Origin: Kudoa neothunni | Lineage: Eukaryota; Animalia; Cnidaria | Direction: 5' to 3' | NCBI GenBank assembly: GCA_964304625.1 | Contig: OZ199840.1 | Span: 5,383,200-5,447,199 of the forward strand | Length of the DNA stretch: 64,000 bases | Shown: positions 516 to 63,725 of the stretch, piece after piece | Layout: every line of letters starts with the position of its first letter | Position numbering within the stretch: position 1 is the first letter of the stretch | The notes under the pieces: generated by a model | Told to the model about the DNA's origin: nothing | The model's input: the letters and a program-made list of their open reading frames with translations, nothing else | Database searches by the model: none | Program-made: the position numbers and the translations under genes

Positions 516-1461
516 ATGTATCACATAGTAACGCAGTTTCTATATGTTCTAGGTATTTGAAATGTCGAAAATATTCTAATCAACATTTAATAGCATTAGG
601 CTCAAAATATACAAACCAAGACCCAAACGTAATTATTTGATTTAATATAGGGTTTTATAATAATATAACCTAGTTTGAATTATCAGATCCTGTGCTATAT
701 GATATATATGAATGTTTGAAATCGTTTAAAGAAAAAGAATTATTTCAGGATGATAACAAGGTAATAAAGTTAAAATCAAAGTTATTTCAATAAAAGGTCA
801 GTTGAAAATAATTGGAGAAGAAATAGAACACCTACATGGGTTTGTGAACAAATATCCTGAACCGAAAGATATATGTACAATCATTGCCGTGTGTAATGAA
901 AATAAAAGTATTGTTTTTACTGAAATACTATAAAAAAATTAATTATAAAAAAGTCATAAGGTATAAACAAAATAAAGAGTGTCTGCCGTGTTTAGTGAGA
1001 AAAATATTTATGTTTATTTATTCAATATGTTCTATCAATAGTTGGTTCTTTATTTGGATACATTAACTTTGGAATTAAACCACAAAAAAGTCTCGTATAA
1101 AGTAGATATAACTGATAAACTAATTCCATTTTATTAATTAATCTTTTTGAACAAATGAAGAAAATAATTAATTATCACAAAATAATAATATAGGACAGAG
1201 AAAAGTTCCTTCGTGATGCCAAAACTAAATGTGTTGAAGTAGGTCATTGCGACCATTTTGAAGTAGACCCAGGAGATGGTAAAAATATTATTATTTTATT
1301 CACAATTATTTTATAATTCTTAAATTAATGTTCATTAATTTTGAATTATATTAACGATTAATTTAGATGATCTAATCGGAGAAAGAGATGATTTCGACCA
1401 AGTTCGTAGTTGGTATCATGGAATGGCGAAAAAAATGACCTTTGAATTTTCAACCCCCTAG
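516..1461 (+). CDS. Secreted 6-Cys (saposin-reminiscent) family protein, gene 1; 8 exons, 181 aa
   Basis: Exons 516-552, 594-628, 674-760, 802-907, 954-994, 1042-1101, 1194-1278, 1367-1461, all GT-AG, open frame: MYHIVTQFLYVLALGSKYTNQDPN/FELSDPVLYDIYECLKSFKEKELFQDDNK/LKIIGEEIEHLHGFVNKYPEPKDICTIIAVCNENK/IIRYKQNKECLPCL/LVLYLDTLTLELNHKKVSYK/DREKFLRDAKTKCVEVGHCDHFEVDPGD/DDLIGERDDFDQVRSWYHGMAKKMTFEFSTP*. Confidence 0.88.
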
Positions 1462-1935
1462 AAATTAATTATTACTTTCAATAGTGATTTTTTTCTACTT
1501 CATTAAAAACTGTAATATAATATAAACATGAAATTTACGAGTCTAAAATGGGTATATTATGTAAGCTGTATAAAATAATTTCGTTGTTTAATAAAATTTA
1601 ATGAAAATTGAGAGAAGTCAATATTATCAGAATCATGGTGCATATGTGATAATTAAATTAAACCTAAATTTTTATGTACTAAAATAAAATATAAGCTGCT
1701 GTTTTATATTTATATTTTTAAGAATTTTGAAGTAAGATATAAAATAAAATTTTAGGACACACCAAACCACTAACACTAAGATTATAATTTATAATGCATA
1801 CCGCTACTCCATTAAAGTTGTTACGTATAAAATTCTTTTTATATAATTTCGTATTAAAAAAGATGCTAATTGTGATTAGATACTATTAGTTTATATCGAA
1901 TCACTTTTATTTTGAAAATAAATTATTTTTATTAA

Positions 1936-4204
1936 CTTTTCCAAATAAAATGGTGTATTTTTATACCCCAGGCCTATTTAATCTTTAATTTTTTACCTCA
2001 AATCCAAGACTAAAATTTTTTATATTCCGTCTAATCTTTTAATGTTATATAATACATATTCTAGCTGATAACAATTTTTTTTTGTTTCGTAAAATAAAAT
2101 ATAACGCGAAAATACCCTCCGAGTAAAATTGGGGAATTTTTACACCCCACATTTTTTTAACCTAAATTGTTCCAAATACAAAATAATATTTTTTTGGTCA
2201 ATTTGACACAATTTCAACGACGAATTATTGTTTAAATCAACAAATAGTACTGGTCATATTGTAATGCGCACGCGCAATTTACGTTATGAAATGGGTTCCG
2301 GTGATTATAGCAACAGCTGCTCTGAGTTATTCCGTTATATGTGATACGTCATCAGATAATTTGGAAGTTGAAAAAATGCTCCATCTGACTCTTTAATACA
2401 TAAGACTGGAGCTTTAAAGACAATTAAAAACCCCTCGACTTATAGAACTGCGACCCAAAGTATTTTGACCAGTCGTACTGGTGTTTATCCTTCGTTTTTC
2501 AGAATGTAAATGAAATCATTGATACGTTTAAAGTGCTTTTTCGCCAGGAAATATATGATTTAATTTTGAAACATACAAATCAATACGGTAAACATTTATT
2601 TGGTGAAGCTTGGGGGCAATTAGATAGTGTTGAATTCGATGGATTCAACGGATGTTTATTGTTAATGGGAATATTTGACGATAATCAACAAACAATAAAA
2701 GAATTGTTTGGTTTAGAAGAGGGAAGACAAGTTTATCGTGACCTATTTTCTTTAAATAGATTCCGACAAATCAAGAGAGCTCTTCATTTCGACGATTTGG
2801 AAATATGAGAGATAAGAAAAATATCAGATAAATTTTGCTACATTCGTGAACTCTAGGATATCTGGGTTGACTCGCTTATCCAGAGTTTTCGACCTTCTGA
2901 GGATCTTTGCATCGATGAATAACTTGTGGCTTTTAGAGGTCGTTGTAAATTCAAATAATATATGCCAAAAAAACGTTCAAAATATGGCCTAAAGTTTTTT
3001 TTAATAATTGAAAACAAAAGTCAACTTTTGTTTGCAATGCAATTGTCTATTTGGGAAAGCGATCTCAAAATGATACGAGGGCTGTGAATGTTGGGAGGAA
3101 TATTGTTTTAAAGTTAGTGGAACCATTCGAACGTTCTTGTCGAAATTTCTTGTGACAATTTTTTCACGTCTATTGAGTTAGCGGATGAATAGATACAAAA
3201 AAAATTACGTTTGTTGGAACAATGCGTTCAAATAAGAGAGAGAGATACCACCGTATTTGAAACCAGATAAAACGACTCCTCTTCATACATCTCTTTTTGT
3301 TTTTAACAACAAAAAAATGATACCAAGATATCTGCTTCACAGAAATAAACCTGTTTATATGCTTTGTCCCTCCCCAACAAACACCCAAATATCATCAGAA
3401 AGGCCATTAAAACCCGATGTCATAATGCATTGCAATGAAGTAAAAGGCGGAGTTGATACGATTTCCAGATTATTGTCAGCAATAAATGTGAGACGAATAT
3501 CTTGTCGTTGGCCGTTAATTGTTTTCTTTAACATAGTTGATATTAGTCTGATTAATGCGTTCTGTATATACAAAAATTTATTCCCTTCTTCAAAATTGCT
3601 TCGGAGGGAATTTTTGAAAATGATGGCAACCCAATTGACACATCGACTTCTTTTGAGTTTTGAGACGGAAACAAAATATGACAGCTAGTGAAGACTCCTC
3701 TGTTATAATTGGACAAAATAGTTACGGGAGATGTCGATTTTGCGATAGGAAGTATGATAGAAAAACAAAAATAAAATGCGACATTTGTGCTTCATCTTTC
3801 TGCAAATTCCATTCCAGTCATATTTGTTTTATTTATCTTAACCGATAATTATGCCAATTTTGTTTTATTATTATTGTTATTCTTTTGTTCGTATATTTAA
3901 AAAAATAATCTAATGCTGCTTAAAAGCTTTCCTGAAATAGAATCTTAAACGTGTTGTCAATAAACATTCTACTTCTACAATATGTACAATACGTGATCAA
4001 TTTGAATTGTGCGCATGCGCTGTACTGGCTTAGCTAGAAATATTGTTCTAAAATTTCAAATTTAATCGATAAAAATACGTCAAAATTTTTAAAAATAATT
4101 ATTTTTGAATTCTTTTTCTTTTTTTTAATAAAAAAATGTGGGGTGTAAAAATACCCCAATTTTATTTTACTCGGAGGGTGTAAATTTTCCAGTGACTTAG
4201 AAGG
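1936..4204 (+). mobile_element. piggyBac DNA transposon (decayed), element PB1
   Basis: TTAA at 1932-1935 and 4205-4208. About 45-bp subterminal inverted repeat ACCCTCCGAGTAAAATTGGGG(A/T)ATTTTTACACCCCACATTTTT at ~2114-2157 and ~4131-4189, with a degenerate third copy at the left terminus. Contains a transposase pseudogene. Confidence 0.85.
2291..3848 (+). pseudogene. piggyBac transposase pseudogene (frameshifts and stops)
   Basis: Motifs FSLNRFRQIKRALHFDD, IDE*LVAFRGRCKF.IYMP, CDNFFTS, KGGVDTI...RWPLIVFFNIVD and the C-terminal Cys-rich domain GRCRFC...CDIC...C..H are spread over several frames. Confidence 0.92.
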
Positions 4205-7298: not shown

Positions 7299-8256
7299 AT
7301 GTTGTATAAGAATAAAGTCAAATCATTCATGTGCTTTTGGTGTGGTATACTGTAAATGTTTTTAAACAAGAAATAATTTTATTTTTTAGCTTTATTCGTG
7401 TTAAATTATTCATACCAAACCGATTATGTATTTACAACTTTTAAACTAATGTAATTATTCGTAAAATAATAAAGATACATGTTAAAAATGCATCTCATTT
7501 TCAATTACATAAAACCTTTGTACGATTACATGGAATGGAGTTATTTAAACACGACGAAATAAAAGTAAAAATAATTTAATATTAAATTATGCATTTTTAG
7601 CATATAGAGAGATATTATTGTGGAAGCATTGATGGATATCGAAGGATTTGTAAATCAGTTCCCAGATTTGGATATCATTTGTAAGAAGTACGCTCTCTGT
7701 AATGGAGATAATGGTATTTTTATTTCGAAATCGTCGCTTATATTCAAATTTTACATAGTTATCATTTTTCATGAAAATGAAGCCTGTCTTCCATGCACTG
7801 TATTCCATTTTTACGTTTTTAGTATATATATATATATGAAATTTTAGTTGATCATATTTCTTTATCATATTAAAGTCACTAGAGGTGAAAATGAAATTTG
7901 TGATAAGGCAAATTCATTTTATGTTTGAAAAAAATGCAAAATAATTATTTTTTATACCGATATAACTTTTAGGATGAGAAAAAATTTTTGGATAATGCTA
8001 CAGAACTTTGTGAATTAGGTTACCATTGTGATCATTCAGAAGGTACATTAAATTCAAGTAATTTATTTCAAAAACTATTATTATATTAACAATAAATTCT
8101 ATAAATTTTTTAACCTTGACGAAGATGAATAACATTTACAAAAAATAATTAGGGAAAATGAGAACGACAACATATAAGACGAACAACGGATTCAGCAATG
8201 ACAATAAAGATCCTAGATTAAAGAAAGATTATTGTATCACTTTTGGATGCCACTAG
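7299..8256 (+). CDS. Secreted 6-Cys family protein, gene 2; 8 exons, ~189 aa, one GC-AG intron
   Basis: MLYKNKVKSFMCFWCALFVLNYSYQTDY/IHVKNASHFQLHKTFVRLHGMELFKHDEIK/RDIIVEALMDIEGFVNQFPDLDIICKKYALCNGDN/VIIFHENEACLPCT/LIIFLYHIKVTRGENEICDK/DEKKFLDNATELCELGYHCDHSEGTLNS/RKMRTTTYKTNNGFSNDNKDPRLKKDYCITFGCH*. First and last exon boundaries are less certain. Confidence 0.8.
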
Positions 8257-9804: not shown

Positions 9805-12584
9805 GTGGTTATTTCTCAGGAGGTGAATTTCTCGAAAAATACTCAACATATTAAACTTAGAATTTACAAATTTTTATAAATTAGTTTAACTTAAGTATTC
9901 TTTTAATTTCAATATTTTACGTAAACGACAATAAAACAAGTACCGGGGAGTGATAATTATTTCACGTAAATTCTCAAATATAGTAATAAATTAAGATTAA
10001 TTTAAATATAAAAAAAGTAATTTTTATAATTTAGTTTATTTCTTTCAGATATAAGATATTTAACTAAACAGATGTAATTTATTATTACATCCTTACATAT
10101 GCTTATTTGTGCATACAGGTTTTCCATGAATAATGAATTGATATCGAAAAAAATTCGAACATTTATTCTTAATTAATATAAATTCATAGTCGAAAATAAT
10201 TATTTTTTACTCTTTTTGATTTCAATGGTTGTTAAATGTCTATCTATTGGTCGATCAATGGACTTTATATTTAAGGGATTTTTAAATCTTAAAGAAAATT
10301 ATCAAATTTATTAAATTTATTACCTTTCAATTGGGGTTGCTCCATCCTGATTATCGATTTTCTGTTCTTGAACATTGTACTCAGTGTTTGAAAGAATTTT
10401 TGATATCGTATGTGGCGAATTTTCAATTAATTCATTTATTGATTCCTAATATGGTTAAATGTAATTTAATAAATTAATAATTATTATTACTTCTTAATTT
10501 TATTTAGTTGGCGAATAAAATTAAGAAGTAAGATAATGGTTATCAACAATCACATGTATCAAGAAAATGATCGATTATTGTGTTTTCGTGGTTTTTTATT
10601 ATCCGTTCTAAAAGATTATTCAGTTGATCTTATTGATTTATCAAAAAAGTCTCCCCAATATTCTGATGTTGTATTAGCCAATTTTGTTGTAGAAGTTGCC
10701 GCATTTTTCAACTTTTTAATGAAACCATTTATTTTAACCTGTTTTATATCAATAATAATAATAAGTTTGTGCGTTATTATCTTTTGGTTATTGGACCTGT
10801 TTTTAAAAATTTCATTCCATATGACTTTTTCCATCTTTGATAGCACAAATCTTCGGAGAAAAGAGGTAACTTCTTAATTGATCTACATATTAACACATGG
10901 CAGCATAGCAATGAGAATCATCGATAAATAAGCATGAACATGTCGTTGGATTTGTAGTTCCATTAAAGCTTGTGAATACGTTATCGTCATTTATTAATGA
11001 GATTTTATCTCTCAATATACTATAAGCGTATTTTGTCAAGTATTGTACGTATAGGAATGTACTTTATACATTAAATGTTTCATTTGAAACATAATACAAT
11101 TGACTTATTGCTATAACCTCTCTTTCTGTTGGGAGGGTGTTCAAAATGTTGAAAAAGTTACAAATAAAATCACTTCAAGTATTGAATTTATGAACATGTT
11201 TTTAATTTTCGAATTTATTGTTTCAATTCGATTGTTTGTATTATTGTCATAAAAGTTTTTAGCATTACTGAGACCGATAACCCATTCACTGAAAATTGAT
11301 TCCAAGTTTCTTTGATAATATTCGCTCAATTTAACGCTGTTTAATGAATGAATTTGATACACATAACTTTTATATTCAATGTAATCATTACATAGAATCA
11401 TTTTCGGTAAACATGTTAAAACATCTTTTTGGGTATTCGATAAATTTTTCTTCCTTATTAGAAACGATTGTATTTAGATTTTCCCGAAGCATTTACATTG
11501 TTTCAGTTAAAACATCGCAAAATCATTGAATAACAGCTTCAGTATCCTCATAGAGTATACATACATTCGTGATGTGTGTTAAACCGAAACAATCAACCCC
11601 TGCAGATAGATATAATGGAGTTCTAAAACTATGATTACAATAAATTCAAATTTTATTAATTATCTTTAATTAAGAAGTTTGTATGCTGCGTCTACCAACA
11701 TCACCTCTGGATATAATGCAAGTAGGATTTCATTTTATTGTGTGCGAAAAAATTCCGTTAACAACGTTATATTTATCATATAAAATTCTAACCTAGCAGC
11801 TATAATCTTCTCTTAATACTTTTTCTATCGCATCCAGGTTAAGGGGGAACAAAATGTTATTTGCTCTAATATCATGGATAGATTTGAGACGAACATTTTC
11901 CCGGTTTCACATTGAATTATAGACTGAATCAATTAAATTAAATTTTGATCATCTAAATCAATTTTTCGTTGTTTTGGTAAATTCTTGAAAATCACTTCAT
12001 TTGATTCATGATTATGAACTAGCATACAAGAACGTATTTCAAGGGCACTTCCATCGACAGGAGGCCTAAGTGATATTTTTACAGGTCAGTCTTCACTTAA
12101 AGCTGGTTTATTCATACTTCCACAAAATTTTGGTTTGTTTTTACCACTGAAAATACACAGTAAGTAATCTCATAATAACGTAGAGTTGGGATGATATTTA
12201 TAATAGTTCCAAAAATTTGATCCCTCGTAATCTAAAATGGAATTATCATGATCCTCGAAGGTGACAAATCGTGTTCTAAATGTAAACATATGTGAATTTA
12301 ATGCGGGCCCAGCCAAATTGTAAGGACAAAATGTGCGCTCAAAGCATGACTTGAACGAACAAAAATTATTTGACCTATTATATTTAATTCTAATTGTTGT
12401 TGTTTTTAATTTTTTTTATTATATGAAAAGTAATTATCACTCCAAATATTCGTGCTGTTGTCGTTTACATACAATTTTGAAATTAAAATAAAACTTAAAT
12501 TAAATTAATTTATAAATATTTGTAAATTCCAAGTTTAATATGTTGGGTATTTTTCAAGAAATACGCTGCTTGAGATATAGCCAC
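9805..12584 (-). mobile_element. Mutator-like (MULE/SWIM, ZSWIM3-type) transposon with long TIRs, decayed
   Basis: About 160-bp imperfect inverted repeats at ~9805-9965 and ~12425-12584 (GTGG(T/C)TAT(T/A)TCTCA...GAAAAATAC(T/C)CAACATATTAAACTT(A/G)GAATTTACAAAT...GTAAACGACAA...GGAGTGATAATTA). Internal transposase remnants lie on the minus strand. Confidence 0.8.
10500..12289 (-). pseudogene. MULE/SWIM transposase pseudogene
   Basis: Fragments: MFTFRTRFVTFED (start), PVKISLR...LVHNHE (WRKY-like zinc finger), YPEVMLVDAAYKL (MULE first Asp), NTNNRIETINSKIK (catalytic Glu motif), TCSCLF (SWIM). The 3' limit is approximate. Confidence 0.75.
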
Positions 12585-13821: not shown

Positions 13822-14665
13822 ATGAAATACATAATTTTTATTATTACCATATTTTGCTGTAATTTCAACAATTAAAATTTTCTATAAGTATTATAGATAT
13901 AATCAATTTTAAAAATGTTGTTAAAGGATGCTACGTGAGTTATTTTATATTTTATTTAATAAATATAATCACATTCCATAGTTCAAAGTAAGGTACGACG
14001 CGTTTACTGATCTAGGAGAAATTTTAAATGAAATGTATTCGAACGAATTATTTCGACATGATGAAAGAGCAGTATTTATTTTTAACTTTTTTAAAATATA
14101 TATTATCTAGAAAGAAATAATAGAAAACGCATTTATCAATTTCGATGCGTTTGTTAATAAATTCCCTATCAAGTCAGAAATTTGCGGTAAATACGCATGG
14201 TGTATTAACGATATCCGTATAAAAAATTATTCACAAAAATAAATAATTGTTTATCGTAGTGTTAACTTGGATTCATAAAAACACTTGTTTACCTTGCATT
14301 GTAACTATTTATGAAACAATAAGATTCTAATAACATTTTAGTTGGTCTTATATCTTAATTATATTAGCGTCACTGTAGATCCAAACCAAGTCACCCCTTA
14401 TGTATGCTGCTGAGTTGATGTTTAAATCTTATAAAAATTATTTTTGGACCATATATATATTTTGTGATCTATTTGTAATAATTTTAGATAGAATTGCAAC
14501 TTCATCAAGCTTCGAAAACCATATGTGAAATTGCAAATTATTGCGTAGAACCGGAAGTGTATTCTTCAAGGAGTATATAAGATTTGGATCATTTTAACAT
14601 TACTACTATATAAGAATATTGTGAAATTTTATTTTTTTATAATAGATTTTACTCAATATTCATGA
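13822..14665 (+). CDS. Secreted 6-Cys family protein, gene 3; 8 exons, 158 aa (short tail)
   Basis: MKYIIFIITIFCYIINFKNVVKGCY/FKVRYDAFTDLGEILNEMYSNELFRHDERA/KEIIENAFINFDAFVNKFPIKSEICGKYAWCINDI/LLTWIHKNTCLPCI/LVLYLNYISVTVDPNQVTPY/IELQLHQASKTICEIANYCVEPEVYSSR/NFTQYS*. All introns GT-AG at family positions. Confidence 0.85.
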
Positions 14666-17659
14666 GTTAAAAGTCTTCTAATGAAATAATAAAGAAAACT
14701 CGTTTTACTATATTTCAATTACCAAACGATAAAGAAGCTAATTGTCAATAAATGAAATCTGATTCCATTGTCTTCTTGAACGAAATTATATCAAACTACA
14801 TTAGTTACAAAAAATTTTATATTTTCATATCTGTTTTAATTTTGATTTTTCTTCAAAAAAACATTAAGTTTAAAAATAATGAATTTTTAATTAATGCGGT
14901 ATAATAAATAATAATTGCACCATTAGAAATTTTATTGGAATTACATATTATCTAGGGGTTAAAAACGTGTTTTGCATTTTAAGTACGTTAGAGGAAACCA
15001 GAGTCATAACCTGAACTAGAAAAAACGAGCATGGCACATGATACGTATGGACAACCTTATAATTTTGGTTTTGTGACATCTAGAATAATAGAGGACAAGG
15101 TGTGTGACGATTAATTTGTCAAATGTAATTAGTAAACACATTTAATATACCTAAATCTATTTATTGGTTTATTTAATTTAAATATACAATATATTAAATT
15201 TCTTGTTGTTAGAATTCTTAATTATTATTTTGAATAAACATATATTTCGCCAATTTATTAAGTTTTGTATTATATATTTTTCTAAAATTATAAAGTAGTA
15301 TTTAATCATTAATTAATTATTATAAAACAAACAATTAACTTTAAAACGTTCTCAAAATTTTTGTTGAGATAAATATGTATATTTTTAAGCATTATAATTA
15401 ATACAACGTAATATTAATTATATGCTAAATATTGATAGTTTTTATACTAAAAATTAATACAGTAGGTAATAGATATTCCGTAATTTTATTTTTTTTTCTC
15501 ATATATGAAATATTCGAGTCGAAACAATTTTTTTAAGATAAAGAAGTTCATTTTATGTAATTAAAATTAAAAATTAAAAAGAAAATTTATTTATAAACCT
15601 GTTTTTAAAGAATAGGGATTATCAATTTTACGTAACTTTTCGACCCCAACCATAATTTTCACAATCTTTTGTTTTAATTAATCACACCCTCATTACTGTT
15701 GCAAATCGTTTATACATGAAAAGTTTTTAATTTTTCACCTTATAAAATCTGCGAAGGAAAGATAAATCTTACTAATTTAGTGGTTTTGATCTCGAACCTG
15801 TTTTTGCTTAGAAAACTCCTGAAACAGTAATGTTGAATTGATTTCCTTACGTAAAATAATTTTTTAATTACTCAAAGGAATCATTATAGTCTAAAAAACG
15901 ATTTATTATAGATGATTTAATGTGTACCAATGTTAATAGAATTCATCCACAAAAAATTTATTAGTTTTAGAAGACTTTATGGTCATTGATCGTGACAAAA
16001 TTTAAAATAAAAAATTTTCTAGGATGGACATTTATGAACTCAAAACTGTTACCATAACTAGTTGAACTGATTGTATGCTATTGCTACAAGATTTTCTACC
16101 GATCTTTTTTATAAAATTTATATATAATAATATTAATTATATATAAATTATCAAATGTAAGCTTTGATTTACGTCTGAAATACAATTCACATCTAGAAAA
16201 GATATCTAAAATGATTTGTGATCTAGTTTTATACGCCCATTCCTAGATGTTATTCAGATCGTGATTTGATTTGTCATCAAACGAATTAACGATTTTATGA
16301 CTAAATTAAAAATTTATCTATTTAATTTGAATAAAATAATAAATCAATAATGATGATGAAACATTCAAATATATCCAATTTGTTTAAATAAAAATTTATG
16401 TCTCTGTATTTAAAATTTTTACATCTAAACTAGATTATATAACGTCTTTAAAGTATTTTTCAAAAAACTCATCAATTTAACTACTATCTCTCAATAAACG
16501 AATAATTTATTTTTCAAAGTCAAACTACATAAGTAATTCGGTTAAAAACATATTATTGGAAACGATAGCGGTCGAAATACATAGCCACCAGCTTCTCTTC
16601 AAGTTATGTTAAAAAGATAAAATCCTCCTAAAAATTAACAATTTTGAACTTTATTAAATTACTCCAATATAAAATATTTTTAAATGTATATGCACACGTT
16701 AAAAAAGTACGTAAAATCAGTCGGTGATTCATTTGCAGTAACTTTCCGGTGGCCCCAATGAGATTACGGAAAATTTACTACTTACTGTATAGTTAATTTT
16801 TTGGAGTGTTGTATTTAGTATATACCAAATAGTTACTACTTTGTTAATATTAATGAAAATTTTCAAGACCATTACTCCAAATCGGCACTTTCCGATTCAT
16901 TTTAGTTCTCTCACACATTACCACATATGAAGATACCTTTACACCCCATCACAAAAAAGAGATTTAATAATTAATTTAATTTTCGACGGGAGAAATATTA
17001 ATACTAAATTACATACAAAAGAAAACAGATGTGGATAAAATAAATGCGACTGATAATAAATTAAACGTTTTGACTTTTTTCGTGCCTTTTTTGGACAATA
17101 ATTAAGTTAAATGGTACTCTTTACCAGTTAAACATGTAAATAAATCATCATCTGCGGGTGAACTAGATATGTTAGTATTTTAATGAAAAATATAACCTAC
17201 GACTAAATGCGCTTGAGCCTAATTTTGCATTTTGTAGGGGTTTTTTTTATTATTAATTTAAAAGTTAAATGTGGAAAAAAAACACGTGAACGTATCCCGA
17301 ATGGAAAGTTTTAATTTATGTAATGTTTAGACATAATTATTTTATTTCGAATCATAAATATTTAAACTACTATAAAATAAGAATAAATTTCTTTATCATG
17401 ACGCTTATGAAAGTTTAGTTTCGACTTGTCTTGTAGTTTACTTAAATTACAATATAAATAATTTGACCTACTCCAAACCGCTTAAAGAATCATTAATATT
17501 TACCGTTAAAATTAAAATATTTCATAATTTTCTTTGTTGAGATATTTAAGATTTGACAAAATAATTTATTTTTGAACATAAAATATTTGATTGAAATAAA
17601 ATTAATTTTCAGAAAAATTCGTCAAGTGACTTATTATTTCTCAGATTTATTTCAGCTTC

Positions 17660-21117: not shown

Positions 21118-22014
21118 ATGTCTTTCATATTTATATGTCTATTATGTAAATTTTAATTATTCAATATTATTATAAGTAAATATAGATTTAATAGAAATAA
21201 AGAACACTTATGAAGGTCGTAACGTAATCTTATGTTATATTCCTATGTACTTTGAAAAAAATCATTATTTTTAGTTTTTACTGCATAAACCAGCACACGA
21301 TATGTTGGTTTATAAGTTAACCCAACTCTATAATGATGAATTATTCAAATATGATCACGAAGCAGTAATAATGGAATAAACGCATTTAATTAAATAACTT
21401 TCAGAGAAGTGTTATTCTTGATGCAATTGTAAATATAAACGGATTTGTTAAAAGATATCCAATAGAAAACGAAATTTGTGTTAAGTTTGCTATGTGCATT
21501 GGTGATAATAGTATGCTAGTATTTATATAAATATTATAACGTTGGGTAGTTTATGCTTGGTTTCATAAATTCACTTGTTTTCCATGCATTGTAATGCATA
21601 ATTTTTAAATCATTTCTTACACGATATAGCTGGTCTTATATCTTAATTTTATAAGAATTACTGAAAATAATGCTCATTTGGATGAATACGTATGTTATAT
21701 TATTCTCTCCATTTTACACAAATTGTGTTTTATATAGAATGGATTCTTATTACATATTGCTTCGAGAGGAATATGCGAAGTGGCCAAATATTGTGAAGCG
21801 AATCAGTTGCGCTCTGGAACATGTAGAAAATTTTAGCATTTGAATCCATTAACGTATTTATCGATCGTAATGTTCCATAAACTTTTTAGTAACTACGCAA
21901 TATGGATTTCATAAAGGATACAATAATTTTAAATATATGCTTCAACGCAACAACGAATCAAAAATTTTGACGTCGGATGAATCAAATAATAGAAAGGACC
22001 CTGACAAAAAATAG
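21118..22014 (+). CDS. Secreted 6-Cys family protein, gene 4; 8 exons, 190 aa
   Basis: MSFIFICLLYLIEIKNTYEGRN/FLLHKPAHDMLVYKLTQLYNDELFKYDHEA/RSVILDAIVNINGFVKRYPIENEICVKFAMCIGDN/IYAWFHKFTCFPCI/LVLYLNFIRITENNAHLDEY/NGFLLHIASRGICEVAKYCEANQLRSGT/LTTQYGFHKGYNNFKYMLQRNNESKILTSDESNNRKDPDKK*. TATAAATA at 21061. Confidence 0.88.
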
Positions 22015-35739: not shown

Positions 35740-36665
35740 ATGATTTCATTTTTTGCTTGTTTCCTATGTAATTTGATACAAATCATATAGTAATCGATAA
35801 ATCTAGATATTACATGTCTGTGCAATAGAATAATTACTGAAGTTGTGAGTTGATTATTATAAAATATTCGCTTTAAACCAAAATATTTATTTCATTTATA
35901 GCTGATAGTAAGAGATTTGGCTCAGCGAGACCTGGCATCAAATCTTATGGAATTCCTTAATAATGATTTGTTTAAATACGATGAACAAATTGTATAATTT
36001 AATTTTATAAACATTTTCAACGAATGTATAGAAACAAATAATACAAGAGTCAATTCAAGATTTACCAGTGTTTGTCAACAAATTCCCAATAAAATCTGAA
36101 GTGTGTAAAATTTATGCGTTTTGTGATGGAAACACTAGTACATTAATATGCTAGTGAAAAATTTATGTATAATAATTAATCATAGTTTTCTGTTGGAATA
36201 ACAAAAGAACATGTTTCCCTTGTATTGTAATTACAAGTTTATAAATAATTAATTTTTATACGATGATTATAGCTGGTAAAAATCCTTTTTTTTAAGGAAG
36301 CAATTGGCCAGCAGATTCCTCTTGGTCCAGCCGTAAGTCTTATTATTGTTACGACTATAATACATACAATCCAATTGATTTTTTAATGAACTTGGATTAT
36401 AGGATGATCTTCAGCTTCATGTGGCCTCGAGAACAATATGTGAAACAGCAAAACTATGCGAAGGTCCTTATGTGCCTCCTCCACCACGTAAATAGATCAG
36501 AGTTTATTTTTCATTTACCATGATAATTAATAAATATTTTCAGCATCACAGGCTTGTGCATCATACTTCAGAAATACCAGGAATAACACTACATTCCAAC
36601 AAAACCATGATTATATTGAATATGAAAATTATCCCCGTTTCACTCGATGGCCGATATATCCTTAA
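35740..36665 (+). CDS. Secreted 6-Cys family protein, gene 5; 8 exons, 189 aa
   Basis: MISFFACFLYITCLCNRIITEV/LIVRDLAQRDLASNLMEFLNNDLFKYDEQI/KQIIQESIQDLPVFVNKFPIKSEVCKIYAFCDGNT/IFCWNNKRTCFPCI/LVKILFFKEAIGQQIPLGPA/DDLQLHVASRTICETAKLCEGPYVPPPP/PSQACASYFRNTRNNTTFQQNHDYIEYENYPRFTRWPIYP*. Confidence 0.88.
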
Positions 36666-37005: not shown

Positions 37006-39282
37006 GAAACATTGGAACCTTTTAATTAGTTCATAGTAGAAATTAAATTAAACTAATTTGAAATATTGATGAGATTAGAAATACATGGAATAATCGATCA
37101 AGAAATTCGTTCTTATGAGACTATGATAGATAAAGTTATTATAATTTCCATTTACTTAATCCATAATACAAGGTTTAATGAAAATAATTATATTTCCGTG
37201 GTTATCTGAATAAGACAACGAATGAGCTATCCCTAAAATATTTTTTATTATAATAAATTTATATTTGATAAAATAAAAGCAAATTAATTTTTAAATTTGT
37301 TTCTGTATGTATATTGTATATTGTATACTAGGGACGCATTCGGAACTAAATTATTTTATAATTAATTTATGATGTTTATAAAAACGCGAAATTCGTTTAA
37401 ATGAATGATGAAATTTTACGTAACATAAACAAAGGTGGAATATTAGTCTCTTGCAATAATCTTAATTTAACAATATATTATATTGTATATTTTAACTCAA
37501 TGAAATTTAATTAATTTGACAAATTAATAATTACATCGAAATATCCCATTATTTTTTTTAATTTGTTAAATTTCGCGTAAATATTATAATGTGGAATAAA
37601 TTTTAAACACAATGTCTTTTTTCACATTAGTTTTTTGAAATCGCAACAAATTATAGGATTAATTTTATTTTTTTTTGAGTTCTCCTTATTAATAATTTAT
37701 ATAAACGAATATATGAAGAACCAAAAAATACCGAAATAATTGGACAAAACAAATATAAAAATAATTCCTAGTTGACACATATAGTTTCAACGTTTGAAAA
37801 GGGTAGTGATTTTTAAGAGATTAGCGACCCATCCTTAAATTACGAAGAAAATTAAATGAGCTATAAATTAATAAAGTTTTTCATTTAAGTGTAATTCGAT
37901 ATAATAACCTCATGTGAATCCTCTGATTAACTAAAGTACAACTAAATAAAATAAAAACAATGTACCGTTGATTTAAATAATTTTGCATGAAAAAATCATT
38001 GTGAAAAGTATTTTTCTTGAGCAACGTTTCCTTGTAACCAATGATTTTGGGAATTTTTAGAATTATCTATTTTTACACATTATTCCAAGGTTTTTTAATG
38101 AGGTATGTTTTCATGAAATAATTTTGTATTATTATTTTAATGTGTTTGAATTTAAAAGAATTGAAAATTATGTTACGAAATAGTCAATTTCTGTAATACT
38201 TTTTTTGTGTTAACCCCGAACGATAAAAAGCAATGCTCTTATTTTATCAATACAACATTTATTTTATAACCTACAAATAAGCCGGTCGAGAAACGGTCTG
38301 AAAAATAAATTATTATGCTTTTCATGAGTGATAAGTCATATTAATTTAAAATAGAAAACTATACCATATTTAGTTACCAGACATTGACGTTTGGAGTATT
38401 TTATTCATTCTCTCAGTCGTCACACGCACGATTTAACTCAACTTTCTCGAGTTAAAAACTATGTATATTTAATGTAATATGTATTTAAAATGTACTCAAA
38501 ATGATTTTTTATCCACAAAATTTATGCAAACTGAAATCAAATTATGATTTAAGTAAAAAATTATGCTAAAATTTATTTATTTAATTAATTAAGAAAATAA
38601 ATTATTCCATTTGAATGAGTTAAAAATAATTTTTAAAACTTTGCTGTTAAATTAAAATTAACATCAATAAAAAATAATGTTATATTATTTATGAAAAAAT
38701 TATTACATAAAGTATGTAATATAATTAACGTTATCGACATATAATTAATATTTCAATGACGTAATAACATTTCCTGTGGAAAACATATATTTCCAACACA
38801 ATATATTTTTAATCTCATATCGTTATCAATATATCGATTTTTGATTAAGCTAACATCTAATCTAATTAAAATCTCAAATTTTTAAATAAGGATGATTAAT
38901 ATAAGTTTAAACAAATATTTATCAATATTTGAATTCTTTATCGTGTAGTGAATTCATAGATATTAATAAATATAAATAATTTTACCAAATTTTTAATATA
39001 AATATATCAATTATAACATTTTTGTGTAAAAAACTTACGGGAAAACTTTTTAAATTACAAATATATTTAGTAATTTAATATATCACTAATAACTCACTGT
39101 GATTGATCATTATTTCGAACTTCTGAAAATTAATTCTTTTTAATTATTGAATTTATCGTTAACCTTTTTGATAAATGATACAATTTATCAATATTTAATG
39201 TTTTATTTATATTGATAATGATAATTAGATATGATTTGTATATAATCAACAACTCGAGAACTGATACAGATAAATAGTAAAG

Positions 39283-40215
39283 ATGAAAGTTACGTCGTTT
39301 GTTAAATTGGTTTTCTTGTGTATTCTATGATATACTGAGACATTTTTAAATTCATGTAGTTTTCTTGAATTTAAAAATCACTTTTCAAGAGGACAATGTA
39401 AAAACTCCCCTAAAAATATAATATTGTATTTCCACATAAAATGTAATTAAAGCTTAGGGTTGTGGGTGATGCCATTGATCGCATGAAGACGACAATAGAT
39501 AATCTTCGTCATAATAAGCTATTTGACAAGAACCCAATAAAAGTAATTTAATCAAATTAACAAAATAAAATAATTCTTAAAGGCCGATATTATAAACAAA
39601 GCATTCAATAACCTTGACGAGTTTGTTAATCAATTCCCAGTAAAAAGTGAGATTCGCGAGAAGTACGCGGTGTGTGTCGGGAATGACAGTATTTCACTTT
39701 TTGTTCAATAATAATAACTATTCAAATAGTCCAATCCTGGACATATAAAACGATGTGCCTGCCATGCATCGTATACATTATTTCTTAATAAATTTTTATA
39801 TTTCTTTAGTTGATTCTGCACATTTATAATATGAGGGTCACCGGAGACCATAGTGAACTATACCACTATGTAACGCATTTTTTTATTACAAATTGATAGT
39901 TTATTTAAAAACTATTCTATCTTATAATATTTTAATCCATTTTCAATATAGGATGAGTTACAAATCTTGATGGCTTCCAAGTCTATATGCCAGGTAGCAC
40001 TATTTTGTACCGAAGAGCAATTACAATCAGTATCTGGTATGATTCTCAGAGAGATAAAAATTAAATCTTTTCAAAAAGTATATTTAATCATATTTCTAGT
40101 AGGTGAAAAATTTATTCATATGAATGCCGATAATGGATTAAATGAAGCTATCACTAACTTCTTGAATAGCAACAAATTACGTATCAAAATTGAAGGAGAA
40201 ATTCCAAAAAGTTAG
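39283..40215 (+). CDS. Secreted 6-Cys family protein, gene 6; 8 exons, 190 aa (first conserved Cys replaced by Arg)
   Basis: MKVTSFVKLVFLFFLNLKITFQEDN/LRVVGDAIDRMKTTIDNLRHNKLFDKNPIK/ADIINKAFNNLDEFVNQFPVKSEIREKYAVCVGND/IQSWTYKTMCLPCI/LILHIYNMRVTGDHSELYHY/DELQILMASKSICQVALFCTEEQLQSVS/VGEKFIHMNADNGLNEAITNFLNSNKLRIKIEGEIPKS*. Confidence 0.87.
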
Positions 40216-46200: not shown

Positions 46201-47075
46201 ATGAGTTTTACAATATTATTCGCTCTAGTGTTTCTCTGTATGATTTTACGTTTTCAGTTCATAAAATGTTTTTAGATTCAACTCAGTTTAGACACTTAGT
46301 TGCACACTATGTAGAACTTATTCAAAAAATATATATTTCAAATGATGTTCACTTTAGAAAGTGACGCCAAATGCAGACCGACAAACCAGAACCACTGTGG
46401 ACATACTATCCACCCAAAAATTAATTATGAACGATTTTGAAAAGGTAATTATATAAATAATCCAATACCAACATTTTGTTTCTAGAAAGAGGTACTTTAT
46501 TTGGCCTTGGGTGATTCTGAGGAATTTTACAACAACTACCCGCTTGAAAAAGAACTCTGTGAAAAGTATTTCGAATGTGATAATAATAACCGTATGAATC
46601 ATTAAATCATATTTTAAATGTGAATAATCATTATTTTAGTTGTTTCATTAAAAGATAAAATACAATGTCTTCCTTGCATCGTATTTTATTCATTAATTTC
46701 TCAGTTTAATTTTAACTTAGATAATTATGTACATATTTTTTCGTGACAATATTAGAGAAAATTATTGCTTTAATTATCAAGTATGATATTTTATATTAGT
46801 TATATATTCCGATTATTAGTGATGAATAGATAATAATCTCATTTTTAAGGAAAAATTGCAATTACTTTCAGTTGCAAAAATCATATGTAAATTAGCAGAT
46901 AATTGTACTCCAAATCAAGTGACATCATGTCAACGTAATCCACAAATAAATTTATTGCGATAATACTATCGAAATATAGAGAATTAAGATATAATTTATT
47001 TAACCAATATTTCATTTAGCTCCAAACTATGCCGAATCAAGTGATCAACATTACATCCCACCAGATTACCTTTGA
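46201..47075 (+). CDS. Secreted 6-Cys family protein, gene 7; 8 exons, 168 aa (alternative tail frame ends at 47136)
   Basis: MSFTILFALVFLYSTQFRHLVAHY/KVTPNADRQTRTTVDILSTQKLIMNDFEK/KEVLYLALGDSEEFYNNYPLEKELCEKYFECDNNN/LVSLKDKIQCLPCI/IIMYIFFRDNIRENYCFNYQ/EKLQLLSVAKIICKLADNCTPNQVTSCQ/PPNYAESSDQHYIPPDYL*. Confidence 0.85.
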
Positions 47076-52489: not shown

Positions 52490-53586
52490 TTATTCTAATA
52501 TTATCTCCCGTTGAGACCACTCAGAAAGATAGCCTAACATTTTACGATAGAAACTATCGCAGTGATTAGGAATGATTTCTTGATAACATTCAGATATTGC
52601 CATCCTCAGTTCGTTTTCATTTTTGCTCTGCCTTCTTAAACTAAATTTTTCCAGACTGAAAATACATTTTCAATGGGATTCAAGAAAGGTGAATAAGTGG
52701 GAGCAAAAATTTAATATTTAAATTTTCTTCTAAAATCACGGTTTCGAGACCTTTGTAATGGTGTATTCTAGCATTGTCCATAACGAATACCGGGTTTTCT
52801 ATCCTCTTTTCCGTACAAGCGTATTTTAATTCGATGAAGCAATGTTTAAATTCTTCACCAGTGATAGCTTTGTCGTGAAACTTGTGGTAAACAATGGAAT
52901 TTTTTTGATAGCAGAAACCACAGAAATGTTTCTGCTCCTGGTGGCATTGACGAAGGCGTAAGTAGATGTGCCTCTTAGCGACCTACCTCGCTTTGGTCTG
53001 TTAACGACTGCAAAGCTAACTTCATCTAAAAAGATTATGCTTTCGTGTCGCACCGATATTTCCAAATTGCGAAACATGTCGGCGTATTCTTTCTTCTTTT
53101 CCAGGGTGGATTCGCAATTTCTCCTTTCGAGCACAGTCACTAAAGTTATGAGTGTGTGGTAAAATTCACCAATCATTTGATCTATGGTGCTAATAGACAC
53201 GATTTAATTGAATTCATCCAAAACCATTTGTTTGAGCTCCTTTAGCGATAACATGGAGTTTTCGTCCATCGATGAAATATTTTTCTCTTTCTGTTCTAAT
53301 GATAAAATAGAGCGTTTTTCGCCTTCTCTAGGTTTCGGTTAGATGCCTCCTGTCTTTTGGAACTTCGAAGTTATTGTGGTCACGGTTGACCTTGGTAACT
53401 TAATTTGGGAGGCAATCGCAGTAGTACTCATTCCCAAAAGAATAAGCCCATGTATTTGCTCCTTTTACTCATGGAAATCGTCGTCCTTTGTTTCCGTTTC
53501 TGCTTCGATTCTTGAACAAGAAAAGTTTCATGTTCACAGGAATCTGAATCGGACAAGCTCTCATTATTACTGTGGTGGCTATCCAT
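52490..53586 (-). pseudogene. IS630-Tc1-mariner (DDE_3, approx. DD34E) transposase pseudogene
   Basis: HTH region MSTTAIASQIKLPRSTVTTI, IIFLDEVSF, VFVMDNARIHH and PTYSPFLNPIENVFSVWK, with stops and frameshifts. TIRs not confidently found. Confidence 0.88.
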
Positions 53587-55013: not shown

Positions 55014-55949
55014 ATGAGTGTTACAACTACTGTTTTTTTGTGTGTTCTCTGTAAATTCTTTGTATGGTATGTTGGTATTTCTAAATCTGTCTTAGATCTA
55101 TTAACTTTGGAAAACACCCAGGCTCATTATGTATCATTAATGTTCATATTATAGAATTTGATTTATTGAATTAATTCTTTCTAGTACAAAGTGAATGAGG
55201 CAGTCGAAAAACAATCAGTTCCCATTCTTTTGTCGTTAATCGACGATGGTTTAATAAAACATGATCAGGCCAAGGTATCAAGTTCTAATTTAAAAGCTTA
55301 ATTGCTTCTATAGAAAGGTATACTCTATGGAGCTATCGGAGATTTGACGACATTTTACAACAAACACCCATTGCATAGTGAACTTTGCATTAAGTATTTT
55401 GTCTGTGATGGTTACGACCGTATATTTTATTTATTTTGTTATGTTTAATTTCTGAACAATTCTTTATAGTCTTAGCATTGAAAGAAAAGACGAAATGCTT
55501 ACCTTGCATCGTATAATATTTATTCTATACTCGTATAATTTTTCCGTAGATGGTTATGTACCTCTTCTATTACCAAAACATCAAAGGGGAGTATCAATTT
55601 AATCATTACGTAAAATTTTTTGTTTTATTAAATATGTTGAATACGATATTTTTTACGTTTTTCAAAGATATAATTTAAAATCTGTAGGAAGAGCTAGAAA
55701 TGCTTAAGGCTTCAAAGATTGTCTGTGAATTAGGAGATAAATGTAACCATAATCAGGTTGTACAAAGTCAAGGTAAGCCATTAATATTGTTTCAATAATT
55801 ATATGTTTATTTTTTATTTGATCTTAGCAATGAGCGTAGGAACCTCGCATCCCCAACAATTCAATGAAACAAACACACTTCAAAATCTCATAGCTAGAGC
55901 AGGAGGTATGAAATTGACTGGAGTAACCATAGAAGCAGGTACCCCTTAG
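55014..55949 (+). CDS. Secreted 6-Cys family protein, gene 8; 8 exons, 191 aa
   Basis: Exons 55014-55050, 55096-55130, 55185-55274, 55314-55419, 55470-55510, 55550-55609, 55688-55772, 55828-55949: MSVTTTVFLCVLYLLTLENTQAHY/YKVNEAVEKQSVPILLSLIDDGLIKHDQAK/KGILYGAIGDLTTFYNKHPLHSELCIKYFVCDGYD/LLALKEKTKCLPCI/MVMYLFYYQNIKGEYQFNHY/EELEMLKASKIVCELGDKCNHNQVVQSQ/AMSVGTSHPQQFNETNTLQNLIARAGGMKLTGVTIEAGTP*. Confidence 0.9.
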
Positions 55950-61109: not shown

Positions 61110-61110
61110 A
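61036..61110. repeat. Compound microsatellite (TA)n-(GATA)n-(GATG)n
   Basis: Directly visible. A shorter version lies at ~51364-51393. Confidence 0.85.
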
Positions 61111-62134: not shown

Positions 62135-62874
62135 TATCACTGTAGTTCAATGTCAATTTATTAAATTAAGAATATTAAAATTTAGTGATACCGATGTGTT
62201 TATTAATAATAATTTTTGATATCAAAATAAATTAATTGTTTTACACAACCATTAAACATGGATGAGGTTTACAATTTAATTCCTGTCCAACAATTTGAAT
62301 ATATATTTGATAAATAATTATTTTTTACATATATGAATATATCAAATAAAATAATAATTAAAAATTAATATATTCTAAATAATATAATCCCTATCAATAA
62401 TTAAAAATAAACAATAATCTATTAGAATTTAAATTATTCAGTTATCACATTGTTTTATTTATTTATCTACTATTAATCTTTTGAAAAGATTATTTATCTT
62501 AAAAAATATTGGAATTGTGAGAAGCGACGTAACAGAGATATAAATTTATTGCCGTATCTTTGTAATTCAATGATATTAATCAATACAGATAAATAATATA
62601 AACAGACACATTTTAATTATTGTATTTATTTGAATTAAATGTATACGTTAAGCTCGGATAATTGAGTATTTTATAATATTTAACTCAAACTAAAAATCAA
62701 TTAAAAATCTCTCTCAAATCAACGTATATATTATACACAACAAATTTTAGATAATCGATAATCTAGATAGTAATTTTTATTTTTGTTTCTACATATGTGA
62801 AATATATTGTTATCTATACTCGATAAAACCTTAAATAATCGAGATTTTGTCATATTTCTTTTGTGTGTCCAAAA

Positions 62875-63725
62875 ATGTCGATACATACAATTGTTTTCCT
62901 TGGCTTCATTTGTTATATTCATAATTTGATACATAAATTTATTTTTATTAGGTGTCATAAAAATAGTACCTACTATAGAAGATGAGGTATCATGCTTTTC
63001 AAAATAATTTAATACACTTCAATAGTTTATTTTAATGAATAAAATGAGAGATCAGTTGATTCTAAGTTTGGTTGACCTAAGTAATAACAAATTATTTCAA
63101 AGTGATACAATTAAAGTATGCCTTTGGTTTCTTAAATGAAAATAAAATTATCCAGAATCTTATCATACAAGATGCTCTTGGCGATTTACCAGGATTCATT
63201 CATGAGTTTCCTATACTCACAGAACTTTGCGAGATATATGCTGTCTGTGAATACCCCTATAGTATGTTTTTTATTCACCCAATATCAATATAAATATATT
63301 CATAATTTTTTTTTTCGAATTCAAGTTCTCAAATTAAGAAATAAACCTGAATGCGTTCCATGTGTCGTAATTAATTTCTTCATGACAATGATATAGTTTT
63401 ATTATAGTTGGTTTTATATTTGTTTCATATGAGGGAACATATTAATCAACCTTTCACTGAATCAGTAAATATTTATAATATCCACGCAATCTATAAATCA
63501 ACATAATTTCCTTAATTCTCTTTCGCCACAGAAACAATATATGTTACTTCAAGTAACGAAATTATTATGCACTTTGGGGGATCACTGCACACCCTATCAG
63601 CATTATTTTCACTTACGTAATTAATCATTTTTACATATTTAAAGCTGTTATATTAATCGACTTATTATTTTACTTCATTTTTAGACTCAGTAACTTATAA
63701 CAAAGATCAGGGACCTCATTGCTAA
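62875..63725 (+). CDS. Secreted 6-Cys family protein, gene 9; 8 exons, 163 aa (frame stays open to 63812 after the stop)
   Basis: MSIHTIVFLGFICVIKIVPTIEDE/FILMNKMRDQLILSLVDLSNNKLFQSDTIK/NLIIQDALGDLPGFIHEFPILTELCEIYAVCEYPY/ILKLRNKPECVPCV/LVLYLFHMREHINQPFTES/KQYMLLQVTKLLCTLGDHCTPYQHYFHL/HSVTYNKDQGPHC*. Confidence 0.85.

What the first reader, a model, noticed from the sequence alone, without database searches (positions are those of the whole stretch)
516..63725. Hidden tandem array of nine diverged secreted 6-cysteine proteins with a non-canonical saposin-like frame
Seen: nine same-strand genes mostly 3.5-9 kb apart (one 14.6-kb gap holds the Kunitz gene), each with 8 exons and intron phases 1,0,0,1,0,0,1. 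Exons 4, 5 and 7 are always 106, 41 and 85 nt, exon 6 is 60 nt (57 once) and exon 3 is 87-90 nt. All have a hydrophobic N-terminus, an F(V/Y/I)xx(F/Y/H)P motif and C-x5-C-x13-C-x2-C-x33-C-x5-C (x32 in gene 9). Exons 1-7 are free of stops and frameshifts in all nine, while every transposase around them is broken. Known: saposin-like proteins (saposins, NK-lysin/granulysin, amoebapores) start with CxxC, end with Cx5C and have a central Cys pair. Here the central pair is missing, the CxxC-to-Cx5C span is about half length, and an extra Cx5C precedes it, as at a prosaposin inter-domain junction or in a swaposin. Inference: a lineage-specific, fast-diversifying secreted effector family, possibly lipid- or membrane-active, that I cannot match to a named family.
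Basis: partly seen in the sequence, partly recalled or inferred. Interest (0 to 1): 0.9.

Follow-up and report, generated by a model that had tools for sequence, protein, structure and literature searches.

The report
Kudoa secreted cysteine-stapled protein family
The nine hidden genes are real and belong to a family of at least 45 small, probably secreted, disulfide-braced proteins in the tuna parasite Kudoa neothunni; the family has no recognisable relatives in public protein libraries, and its proposed link to saposins remains unproven.

Summary
Nine + strand genes share exons of 87-90, 106, 41, 60 (57 once) and 85 nt, intron phases 1,0,0,1,0,0,1 and AG/GT borders (one GC donor). All are stop-free in a 25% GC genome. 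One claim fails: gene 6 has Arg (CGC) in place of the first Cys.

The nine are a window-cut slice of a larger family. An exon-4 profile hits 57 places in the genome (Kudoa neothunni by earlier notes), 45 of them at E<=0.003, on three chromosomes. The 106/41-nt exons recur in 20 more paralogues and in one metagenome scaffold from another organism. First readers flagged sister arrays elsewhere in this genome.

Many paralogues carry two extra cysteines that are always present or absent together. This gives an 8-Cys frame, C-x5-C-x13-C-x-P-C-x7-C...C-x7-C-x5-C. It is best read as a disulfide-stapled hairpin behind a helical N-terminal part.

No full-length relative appeared among 1.84 billion proteins, and Pfam gave nothing. 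SapB_1 and SapB_2 miss every family exon. A marginal exon-7 match to saposin B (E 0.011) vanished with a broader profile.

RNA runs gave no reads, which is no test. The spliced proteins could not be searched or folded here. The result is a real new family whose saposin kinship is unproven.

The parts
516..1460 (+). Gene 1. Exons 516-552; 600(or 594)-628; 674-760; 802-907; 954-994; 1042-1101; 1194-1278; candidate exon 8 at 1367-1460.
   Evidence: All borders are AG/GT and exons 1-7 are stop-free. There is an extra Cys in exon 3.
7299..8255 (+). Gene 2. Exons 7299-7344; 7390-7427; 7475-7564; 7608-7713; 7759-7799; 7848-7907 (GC donor); 7973-8057; candidate exon 8 at 8153-8255.
   Evidence: Intron 4 is in frame and open, giving a read-through ORF at 7608-7844.
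13822..14669 (+). Gene 3. Exons 13822-13858; 13897-13934; 13982-14071; 14111-14216; 14260-14300; 14342-14401; 14488-14572; exon 8 uncertain (first candidate 14615-14669).
21118..22013 (+). Gene 4. Exons 21118-21145; 21186-21223; 21275-21364; 21405-21510; 21550-21590; 21630-21689; 21738-21822; candidate exon 8 at 21890-22013.
35740..36664 (+). Gene 5. Exons 35740-35767; 35807-35844; 35902-35991; 36032-36137; 36186-36226; 36273-36332; 36403-36487; candidate exon 8 at 36544-36664.
   Evidence: A DNA contig covers the locus with no differences.
39283..40214 (+). Gene 6. Exons 39283-39319; 39360-39397; 39453-39542; 39583-39688; 39730-39770; 39810-39869; 39952-40036; candidate exon 8 at 40079-40214. 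The first Cys is replaced by Arg (CGC at 39655-39657).
46201..46934 (+). Gene 7. Exons 46201-46237; 46276-46310; 46358-46444; 46486-46591; 46640-46680; 46721-46780; 46850-46934; exon 8 unresolved.
   Evidence: It has two extra Cys, at exon 6 position 16 and exon 7 position 27.
55014..55948 (+). Gene 8. Exons 55014-55050; 55096-55130; 55185-55274; 55314-55419; 55470-55510; 55550-55609; 55688-55772; candidate exon 8 at 55828-55948.
   Evidence: It is the closest paralogue of gene 7 (45% identity; bootstrap 100).
62875..63724 (+). Gene 9. Exons 62875-62911; 62952-62986; 63026-63115; 63156-63261; 63326-63366; 63408-63464 (57 nt); 63532-63616; candidate exon 8 at 63685-63724.

Best explanation
The nine units are intact protein-coding genes. 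They are one stretch of a family of at least 45 micro-intron genes in the myxozoan Kudoa neothunni.

Each gene encodes a protein of about 150-200 aa with three parts:
- an N-terminal signal-like hydrophobic segment (exons 1-2);
- a helical part (exons 3-4) ending in F-x-N-x-Y/F-P and C-x5-C;
- a C-terminal module (exons 5-7) that starts with an invariant C-x-P-C followed by a hydrophobic run and ends with C-x5-C.

In sister subfamilies this module also has a co-varying Cys pair 8 residues inside each arm. The module is therefore best read as an antiparallel hairpin held by nested disulfides, two in the window genes and three in the 8-Cys relatives.

Inferred working: the proteins are exported and oxidatively folded into small, stable scaffolds. 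Their conserved core carries highly variable surfaces and a non-conserved tail. They act outside the parasite cell as binding modules, most likely at the parasite-host interface.

What is shown: gene structure, family size, the Cys frame, the co-varying pair, and the helical exon-4 piece. What is inferred: secretion, disulfide connectivity, the hairpin and the extracellular binding role.
For: - Gene models: identical exon sizes and phases with AG/GT borders in 9 of 9 genes.
- Coding signal: P(no stop) is about 1e-6 per gene, and exon GC is 32.6% against 19.4% for introns. pN is below pS in 36 of 36 pairs.
- Family size: 57 exon-4 hits in the genome, 45 of them at E<=0.003, on three chromosomes.
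- Conserved structure: 106-nt exon 4 and 41-nt exon 5 recur in 20 further paralogues. They also recur in scaffold L029, which has no DNA match to this genome.
- Cys frame: C-x5-C-x13-C-x-P-C aligns without gaps in 27 paralogues, and the Pro is invariant.
- Extra disulfide: Cys at exon 6 position 7 and at -8 from the exon 7 Cx5C are present together in 8 of 8 paralogues and absent together in 15 of 15. The tree needs two changes for this.
- Exon 4 alone folds as helix-break-helix at pLDDT 82.
- Every gene has a hydrophobic N-terminus.
- Neighbours are also secretory-type genes, such as the multi-Kunitz gene.
Against: - There is no RNA evidence. Three RNA runs under the same species label gave zero reads, which is no test.
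- No SignalP was available, so the signal peptide is judged by eye.
- The whole protein could not be folded. The hairpin and the disulfide pairings rest on spacing and on one co-varying pair that changed only about twice on the tree.
- Exon 8 and the true stop codon are unverified.
- The alternating pattern after C-x-P-C (for example I-S-V-T-V) could be strand rather than helix.
- No functional data of any kind exist.
Confidence: 0.55

Rival explanations
1. The proteins are true but minimised members of the saposin-like (SAPLIP) superfamily. The CxxC...Cx5C clamp is inherited, the middle helices are shortened, and the proteins bind lipids or perturb membranes.
For: - The clamp spacing is the same as in saposins: CxxC at the start and Cx5C at the end.
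- The 8-Cys relatives have the saposin Cys order CxxC..C..C..Cx5C.
- The nine-row exon-7 profile has human saposin B and prosaposin as its top three PDB hits, aligned to their last 20 residues (E 0.011-0.035).
- The cores are acidic (pI 5.0-6.3), as lysosomal saposins are from my own knowledge.
- In exon 4 alone, the first Cys of C-x5-C lies in the second helix (H21-27) and the second Cys lies just after it.
Against: - SapB_1 and SapB_2 profiles hit no family exon.
- Pfam finds nothing on exons.
- The saposin B hit is lost with a 15-row profile and with the 8-Cys subfamily profile.
- The CxxC-to-Cx5C span is 33 residues, against about 60 in saposins.
- The central pair sits 8 residues from each clamp Cys rather than about 25.
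- The run after CxPC is uniformly hydrophobic, not amphipathic.
Confidence: 0.2
2. They are structural, disulfide-cross-linked components of the spore or polar capsule (a nematocyst-derived organelle) rather than host-directed factors.
For: - Several members have odd Cys counts: genes 1, 2 and 5 have 7 and gene 6 has 5. Odd counts would allow intermolecular disulfides.
- The duplicates are old and constrained rather than recent.
- The family is conserved in a second organism.
- From my own knowledge, cnidarian capsule walls are built from Cys-rich secreted proteins.
Against: - There is no similarity to minicollagen-type Cys patterns.
- Forty-five or more diverged paralogues are unusual for a structural protein.
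- No expression or proteome data were available.
Confidence: 0.12
3. The gene models are wrong or the genes are silent relics. On this view the conserved blocks are not translated as proposed.
For: There is no RNA support. Exon 8 is not conserved. Gene 6 has lost a core Cys.
Against: - Nine of nine genes are stop-free across about 150 codons where chance gives 1e-6.
- Exon lengths and phases are fixed on three chromosomes and in another organism.
- Exon-intron GC contrast is strong.
- pN is below pS in all pairs.
- The neighbouring transposase genes are visibly broken, so decay is detectable here.
Confidence: 0.05
4. The invariant C-x-P-C is a thioredoxin-type redox motif, and the proteins are secreted thiol-disulfide oxidoreductases.
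For: C-x-P-C with an invariant Pro in 27 of 27 paralogues. It has the form of the thioredoxin CGPC motif (my own knowledge). It is preceded by a short hydrophobic stretch.
Against: - Only about 50 conserved residues follow the motif and about 80 mostly helical ones precede it, which does not fit the thioredoxin fold order.
- No Pfam thioredoxin-like hit.
- The only related PDB hit is a chance-level DsbF match in exon 4 (E 1.1).
- The residue between Cys and Pro is hydrophobic, not Gly.
Confidence: 0.04

Closest known systems
Saposin-like proteins (SAPLIP: saposins A-D, NK-lysin, amoebapores; Pfam SapB_1/SapB_2)
   Same: Both are small secreted disulfide-braced proteins with CxxC at the start and Cx5C at the end of the module. 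The 8-Cys relatives have the same Cys order. There is a marginal similarity of exon 7 to the last helix of saposin B.
   Different: The module is about half as long, with 33 rather than about 60 residues between the clamps. The window genes have no central pair. In relatives the central pair is only 8 residues from the clamp. Pro is invariant in CxPC. An extra helical N-terminal part carries its own Cx5C. There is no Pfam hit, and the PDB hit is not robust.
Swaposin / prosaposin inter-domain junction
   Same: Cx5C is followed after a short linker (13 residues) by CxxC, as where one saposin unit ends and the next begins.
   Different: The N-terminal part lacks the CxxC and the central pair that a preceding saposin unit would need. 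hhalign finds no similarity between the two halves.
Disulfide-stapled helical hairpins (twin CX9C/CHCH proteins, plant alpha-hairpinins)
   Same: The inferred design is the same: two antiparallel arms with cysteines at matching distances (C-x7-C on both arms in 8-Cys members) and nested disulfides.
   Different: The spacing differs (x7 and x2/x5 rather than x9 or x3). These proteins are secreted rather than mitochondrial. No sequence similarity was found, and the hairpin itself is inferred, not shown.
Lineage-specific secreted multigene families of parasites (for example Schistosoma micro-exon genes)
   Same: Both show tandem arrays, small exons, signal peptides, conserved scaffolds with very divergent surfaces, and no homologues outside the lineage.
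   Different: Exons here are not symmetric micro-exons, and the paralogues are ancient rather than recently amplified. This comparison is by analogy from my own knowledge and was not tested.

Membership tests
SAPLIP (saposin-like) | Significant match to Pfam SapB_1 (PF05184) or SapB_2 (PF03489) | tested here: not met
   Six-frame search of the whole genome with both profiles at E<=10 hit no family exon. hmmscan of exons 3, 4 and 7 and of read-through ORFs found no family except one chance-level Hid1 match (E 0.49). The test was exon by exon only, because the joined protein could not be submitted.
SAPLIP (saposin-like) | Six Cys as CxxC ... C ... C ... Cx5C across a domain of about 75-80 aa | tested here: not met
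   Window genes have CxPC-x33-Cx5C and no central pair. The 8-Cys relatives have the right order, but the span is only about 40-50 aa with the central pair at x7 from each clamp.
SAPLIP (saposin-like) | Sequence similarity to solved saposin structures | tested here: inconclusive
   The nine-row exon-7 profile gave saposin B and prosaposin as its top hits at E 0.011-0.035. The 15-row and 8-Cys profiles gave no saposin hit at E<=10.
SAPLIP (saposin-like) | Four- or five-helix bundle fold with nested disulfides C1-C6, C2-C5, C3-C4 | not testable with these tools
   The spliced protein has no reference, so it was not folded. Exon 4 alone is helical at pLDDT 82. A natural read-through ORF (exon 4, intron, exon 5) gave pLDDT 42, which is useless. 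One nested pair is inferred from co-variation.
SAPLIP (saposin-like) | Lipid binding or membrane perturbation | not testable with these tools
   This needs recombinant protein and liposome or lipid-binding assays.
Thioredoxin-like oxidoreductases | CxxC active site at the start of helix 1 within a beta-alpha-beta thioredoxin fold of about 100 aa | tested here: inconclusive
   The C-x-P-C motif is invariant. However, there is no Pfam hit, and the motif's position (about 80 aa in, about 50 aa after it) does not fit the fold order. The fold itself was not testable.
Classical secreted proteins | Cleavable N-terminal signal peptide | tested here: inconclusive
   All nine start with Met followed by a hydrophobic run of about 10-14 residues spanning exons 1-2. 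No SignalP was available, and gene 1's run is weak.

The most novel reading that the evidence does not exclude
The family is a previously unseen 'half-saposin': a SAPLIP reduced to a two-arm, disulfide-stapled hairpin and fused to a helical head. On this reading it has expanded to about 50 genes as the main secreted lipid- or membrane-active repertoire of Kudoa, and it plays a part in how the parasite lives inside, and later damages, fish muscle fibres.
Probability: 0.12. Interest if true: 0.75.

Novelty: new variant of a known kind. Interest (0 to 1): 0.5.

Why it matters
Myxozoan genomes are full of uncharacterised lineage-specific genes (bioRxiv 10.64898/2026.02.11.705288), and the Kudoa neothunni genome paper (PMC12239612) mentions no such family.

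This work defines one of the larger families by exon structure, an invariant Cys frame, a likely extra disulfide and its genomic layout. That gives annotators a concrete model for about 50 otherwise invisible micro-intron genes. It gives experimenters a defined set of candidate secreted proteins from a parasite that spoils tuna and related fish.

If the saposin kinship were proven, the family would show how far that fold can be minimised. If it were disproven, the family is a candidate new small disulfide-rich fold.

Tried and rejected
1. RNA support. The look-up of sequencing runs found only DNA holders. Three 2026 RNA runs under the same species label laid zero reads on 35600-40400. This is no test of expression.

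2. Exhaustive profile search with a 30-row exon-4 profile. It gave one true hit, the 35-aa fragment P0001. The other three were repeat proteins (FLDKYP, FIAQYP) and are spurious.

3. ESM Atlas with exon 4: no usable hit.

4. PDB sequence search with exon 4: only chance-level hits.

5. AlphaFold of a natural read-through ORF (exon 4, in-frame intron 4, exon 5; alignment A4): pLDDT 42, discarded.

6. hhalign of exon 4 against exon 7, to test an internal duplication: probability 6.8%.

8. My own DNA pattern for metagenome contigs had one N too many, which put the Cys codons out of frame. All 54 hits are chance or bacterial genes and none scores above 13 bits with the exon-4 profile. That scan is void and could not be repeated.

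9. The SapB_2 candidate loci L030 and L031 do not look like canonical saposins. No in-genome saposin was therefore available for an intron-position comparison.

10. dN/dS was abandoned because synonymous sites are saturated.

The census of paralogue models is therefore partial.

12. Joined step left out. Exons were joined only inside local scripts, for alignment, identity, pN/pS, Cys tables, a tree and a benchmark of my own profiles.


Full report
**What is there**

The window is AT-rich (22-30% GC). From these I rebuilt the genes.

- Exon 4 is 106 nt with AG and GT borders in all nine.
- Exon 5 is 41 nt in all nine.
- Exon 6 is 60 nt, or 57 nt in gene 9. Gene 2 uses a GC donor there.
- Exon 7 is 85 nt in all nine.
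- Exon 3 is 87-90 nt.
- Exons 1 and 2 are 28-46 and 29-38 nt and encode Met plus a hydrophobic run.
- Intron phases are 1,0,0,1,0,0,1.
- Gene starts are 3.5-8.8 kb apart, with one 14.6-kb gap. That gap contains a gene with a canonical Kunitz Cys pattern.

Gene 6 has CGC (Arg) where the others have the first Cys. Several genes carry extra cysteines. Exon 8 is not conserved, so its acceptor cannot be fixed without RNA.

**Is it more than chance?**

- From base composition a codon is a stop with probability 0.087, so about 150 stop-free codons have P of about 1e-6 per gene.
- Exons are 32.6% GC, the 54 introns 19.4% and the rest of the window 25.8%.
- Introns are 38-92 nt with a GTA(A/T) donor and a T-rich acceptor.
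- The piggyBac-type transposase (DDE_Tnp_1_7) pieces at about 2497-3685, 23703-24164 and 47814-48740 are split into fragments. Decay is therefore visible in this region where it has occurred.

**Organism and wider family**

Earlier notes of this scan identify the genome as the myxozoan Kudoa neothunni, a cnidarian parasite of tuna. A chromosome-scale assembly recovered from host data is described in PMC12239612.

A profile of the nine exon-4 peptides hits 57 places in the 40-Mb genome, 45 of them at E<=0.003:
- a minus-strand block at C3:5.05-5.17 Mb;
- a plus-strand block at C3:5.31-5.47 Mb, which includes the window (C3:5383200-5447199);
- clusters on C1 (2.95-2.99 Mb), C2 (11.29-11.38 Mb) and C3 (9.20-9.23 Mb).

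The 'array of nine' is thus a window-cut slice of a longer same-strand array and of a family of at least 45 members. First readers flagged sister arrays as 'saposin-like' elsewhere in this genome. None had been followed up.

In the 28 loci I could fetch, 20 further paralogues keep a 106-nt exon 4. Nearly all keep a 41-nt exon 5 and an 87-90-nt exon 3.

**Relatives outside the genome**

An exhaustive hmmsearch with a 30-row exon-4 profile against 1.84 billion proteins gave one true hit. It is a 35-aa ORF on a 1,978-bp, 26% GC ENA metagenome scaffold.

That scaffold has no DNA match to this genome. It nevertheless shows the same 106-nt and 41-nt exons and the CLPC motif, so the family exists in at least one other organism.

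No full-length relative was found. Pfam gave nothing on exons or on natural read-through ORFs.

**Age and constraint**

The nine proteins share only 19-45% identity. Synonymous differences are saturated (pS 0.58-0.95), so dN/dS is unreadable. Non-synonymous differences (pN 0.35-0.54) are lower than pS in all 36 pairs.

These are old, constrained duplicates. 'Fast-diversifying' is not shown. On a tree, genes 3-6, 7-8 and 9 group loosely. Gene 1 groups with two upstream members of the same array.

**The cysteine frame**

Exons 3-5 align without gaps in 27 paralogues. C-x5-C-x13-C-x-P-C has an invariant Pro, and F and P of the FxNxYP motif are nearly invariant.

The new point concerns exons 6 and 7. 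Eight fully modelled paralogues have a Cys at exon 6 position 7 and another 8 residues before the exon 7 Cx5C. The partly modelled L003 and the foreign scaffold show both cysteines too, and L008 and L015 show at least the exon 7 C-x7-C-x5-C. Fifteen paralogues, including all nine window genes, have neither cysteine. No paralogue has only one.

The two positions thus changed together, about twice on the tree. This is what a disulfide pair does.

The fuller frame is C-x5-C-x13-C-x-P-C-x7-C-x(10-19)-C-x7-C-x5-C. The equal x7 spacing on both arms around a short variable loop suggests an antiparallel hairpin with nested bonds. The outer two bonds have the saposin spacing (CxxC with Cx5C).

AlphaFold on exon 4 alone, with 30 rows, gives helix 2-17, a break at YP and helix 21-27, at pLDDT 82. 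The N-terminal part is therefore helical.

**The saposin question**

In favour:
- the clamp spacing;
- the saposin-like Cys order in 8-Cys members;
- an unprompted PDB search in which the nine-row exon-7 profile's three best hits were saposin B and prosaposin, aligned to their last 20 residues at E 0.011-0.035.

Against:
- SapB_1 and SapB_2 profiles touch no family exon;
- the saposin hit vanishes with a 15-row exon-7 profile and with the 8-Cys subfamily profile, whereas true remote homology usually gains from added diversity;
- the module is about half the saposin length;
- the run after CxPC is uniformly hydrophobic.

I rate true SAPLIP descent at about 0.2. The 'two 3-exon modules' idea shares exon phases between the halves but has no sequence support.

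**What could not be done**

- No RNA was available. Three RNA runs gave zero reads, which is no test.
- The spliced proteins have no reference, so the joined step (search, Pfam, HHpred-like comparison, folding of the whole protein) was left out. Exons were joined only in local scripts for descriptive statistics.
- One metagenome scan was wasted on a pattern that I mis-typed by one N.

**Verdict**

This is a real and much larger than reported lineage-specific family of small, probably secreted, disulfide-stapled proteins. The conserved scaffold is now well defined, but its fold and function are unknown.

My best reading (0.55) is that they are exported, stable binding scaffolds acting outside the parasite cell. 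The rivals are:
- a minimised saposin that is lipid- or membrane-active (0.2);
- a spore or capsule structural protein (0.12);
- silent or mis-modelled genes (0.05);
- a CxPC redox protein (0.04).

Interest is moderate. The family is new and sizeable, but myxozoan genomes are rich in orphan families, and the striking part of the claim, a non-canonical saposin, is not established.

Noticed in passing
window 2497-3685 (+), 23703-24164 (-), 47814-48740 (+): There are three sets of piggyBac-type transposase fragments (Pfam DDE_Tnp_1_7, E 1e-5 to 5e-25). Each is split over several short ORFs, so they are decayed copies.
   Followed up: partly
window 26086-27551 (+): A multi-domain Kunitz-type gene lies in the 14.6-kb gap. 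One exon has the full C-x8-C-x15-C-x7-C-x12-C-x3-C pattern, and others look like Kunitz units with fewer cysteines. It is also the subject of another first-reader note.
   Followed up: partly
window 7908-7909: Intron 6 of gene 2 starts with GC (AAG|GCAAAT) instead of GT. It is the only non-GT donor among 54 introns.
   Followed up: no
window 39655-39657: Gene 6 has CGC (Arg) where all paralogues have TGT or TGC for the first Cys, a one-base difference. A DNA contig of a public run agrees with the window over this stretch, but it may be the assembly's own source data.
   Followed up: partly
L029:1550-1978 (ENA scaffold RIIS20-1_SAMEA5316497_METAG-scaffold_5105): An AT-rich metagenome scaffold from another organism carries a family member with the same 106- and 41-nt exons and the 8-Cys frame. 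The host or sample type was not identified.
   Followed up: partly
G000:C3:5.05-5.17 Mb (-) and 5.31-5.47 Mb (+): The two largest blocks of the family lie on opposite strands and point away from a gap of about 140 kb between them. The minus block is the 8-Cys type and the plus block is mostly the 6-Cys type.
   Followed up: partly
window 10536-10877 (+), 48200-48727 (-), 52826-53200 (-): These are ORFs of 113-175 aa with no Pfam match. The one at 48200-48727 lies antisense to a transposase fragment and is probably a chance ORF.
   Followed up: no
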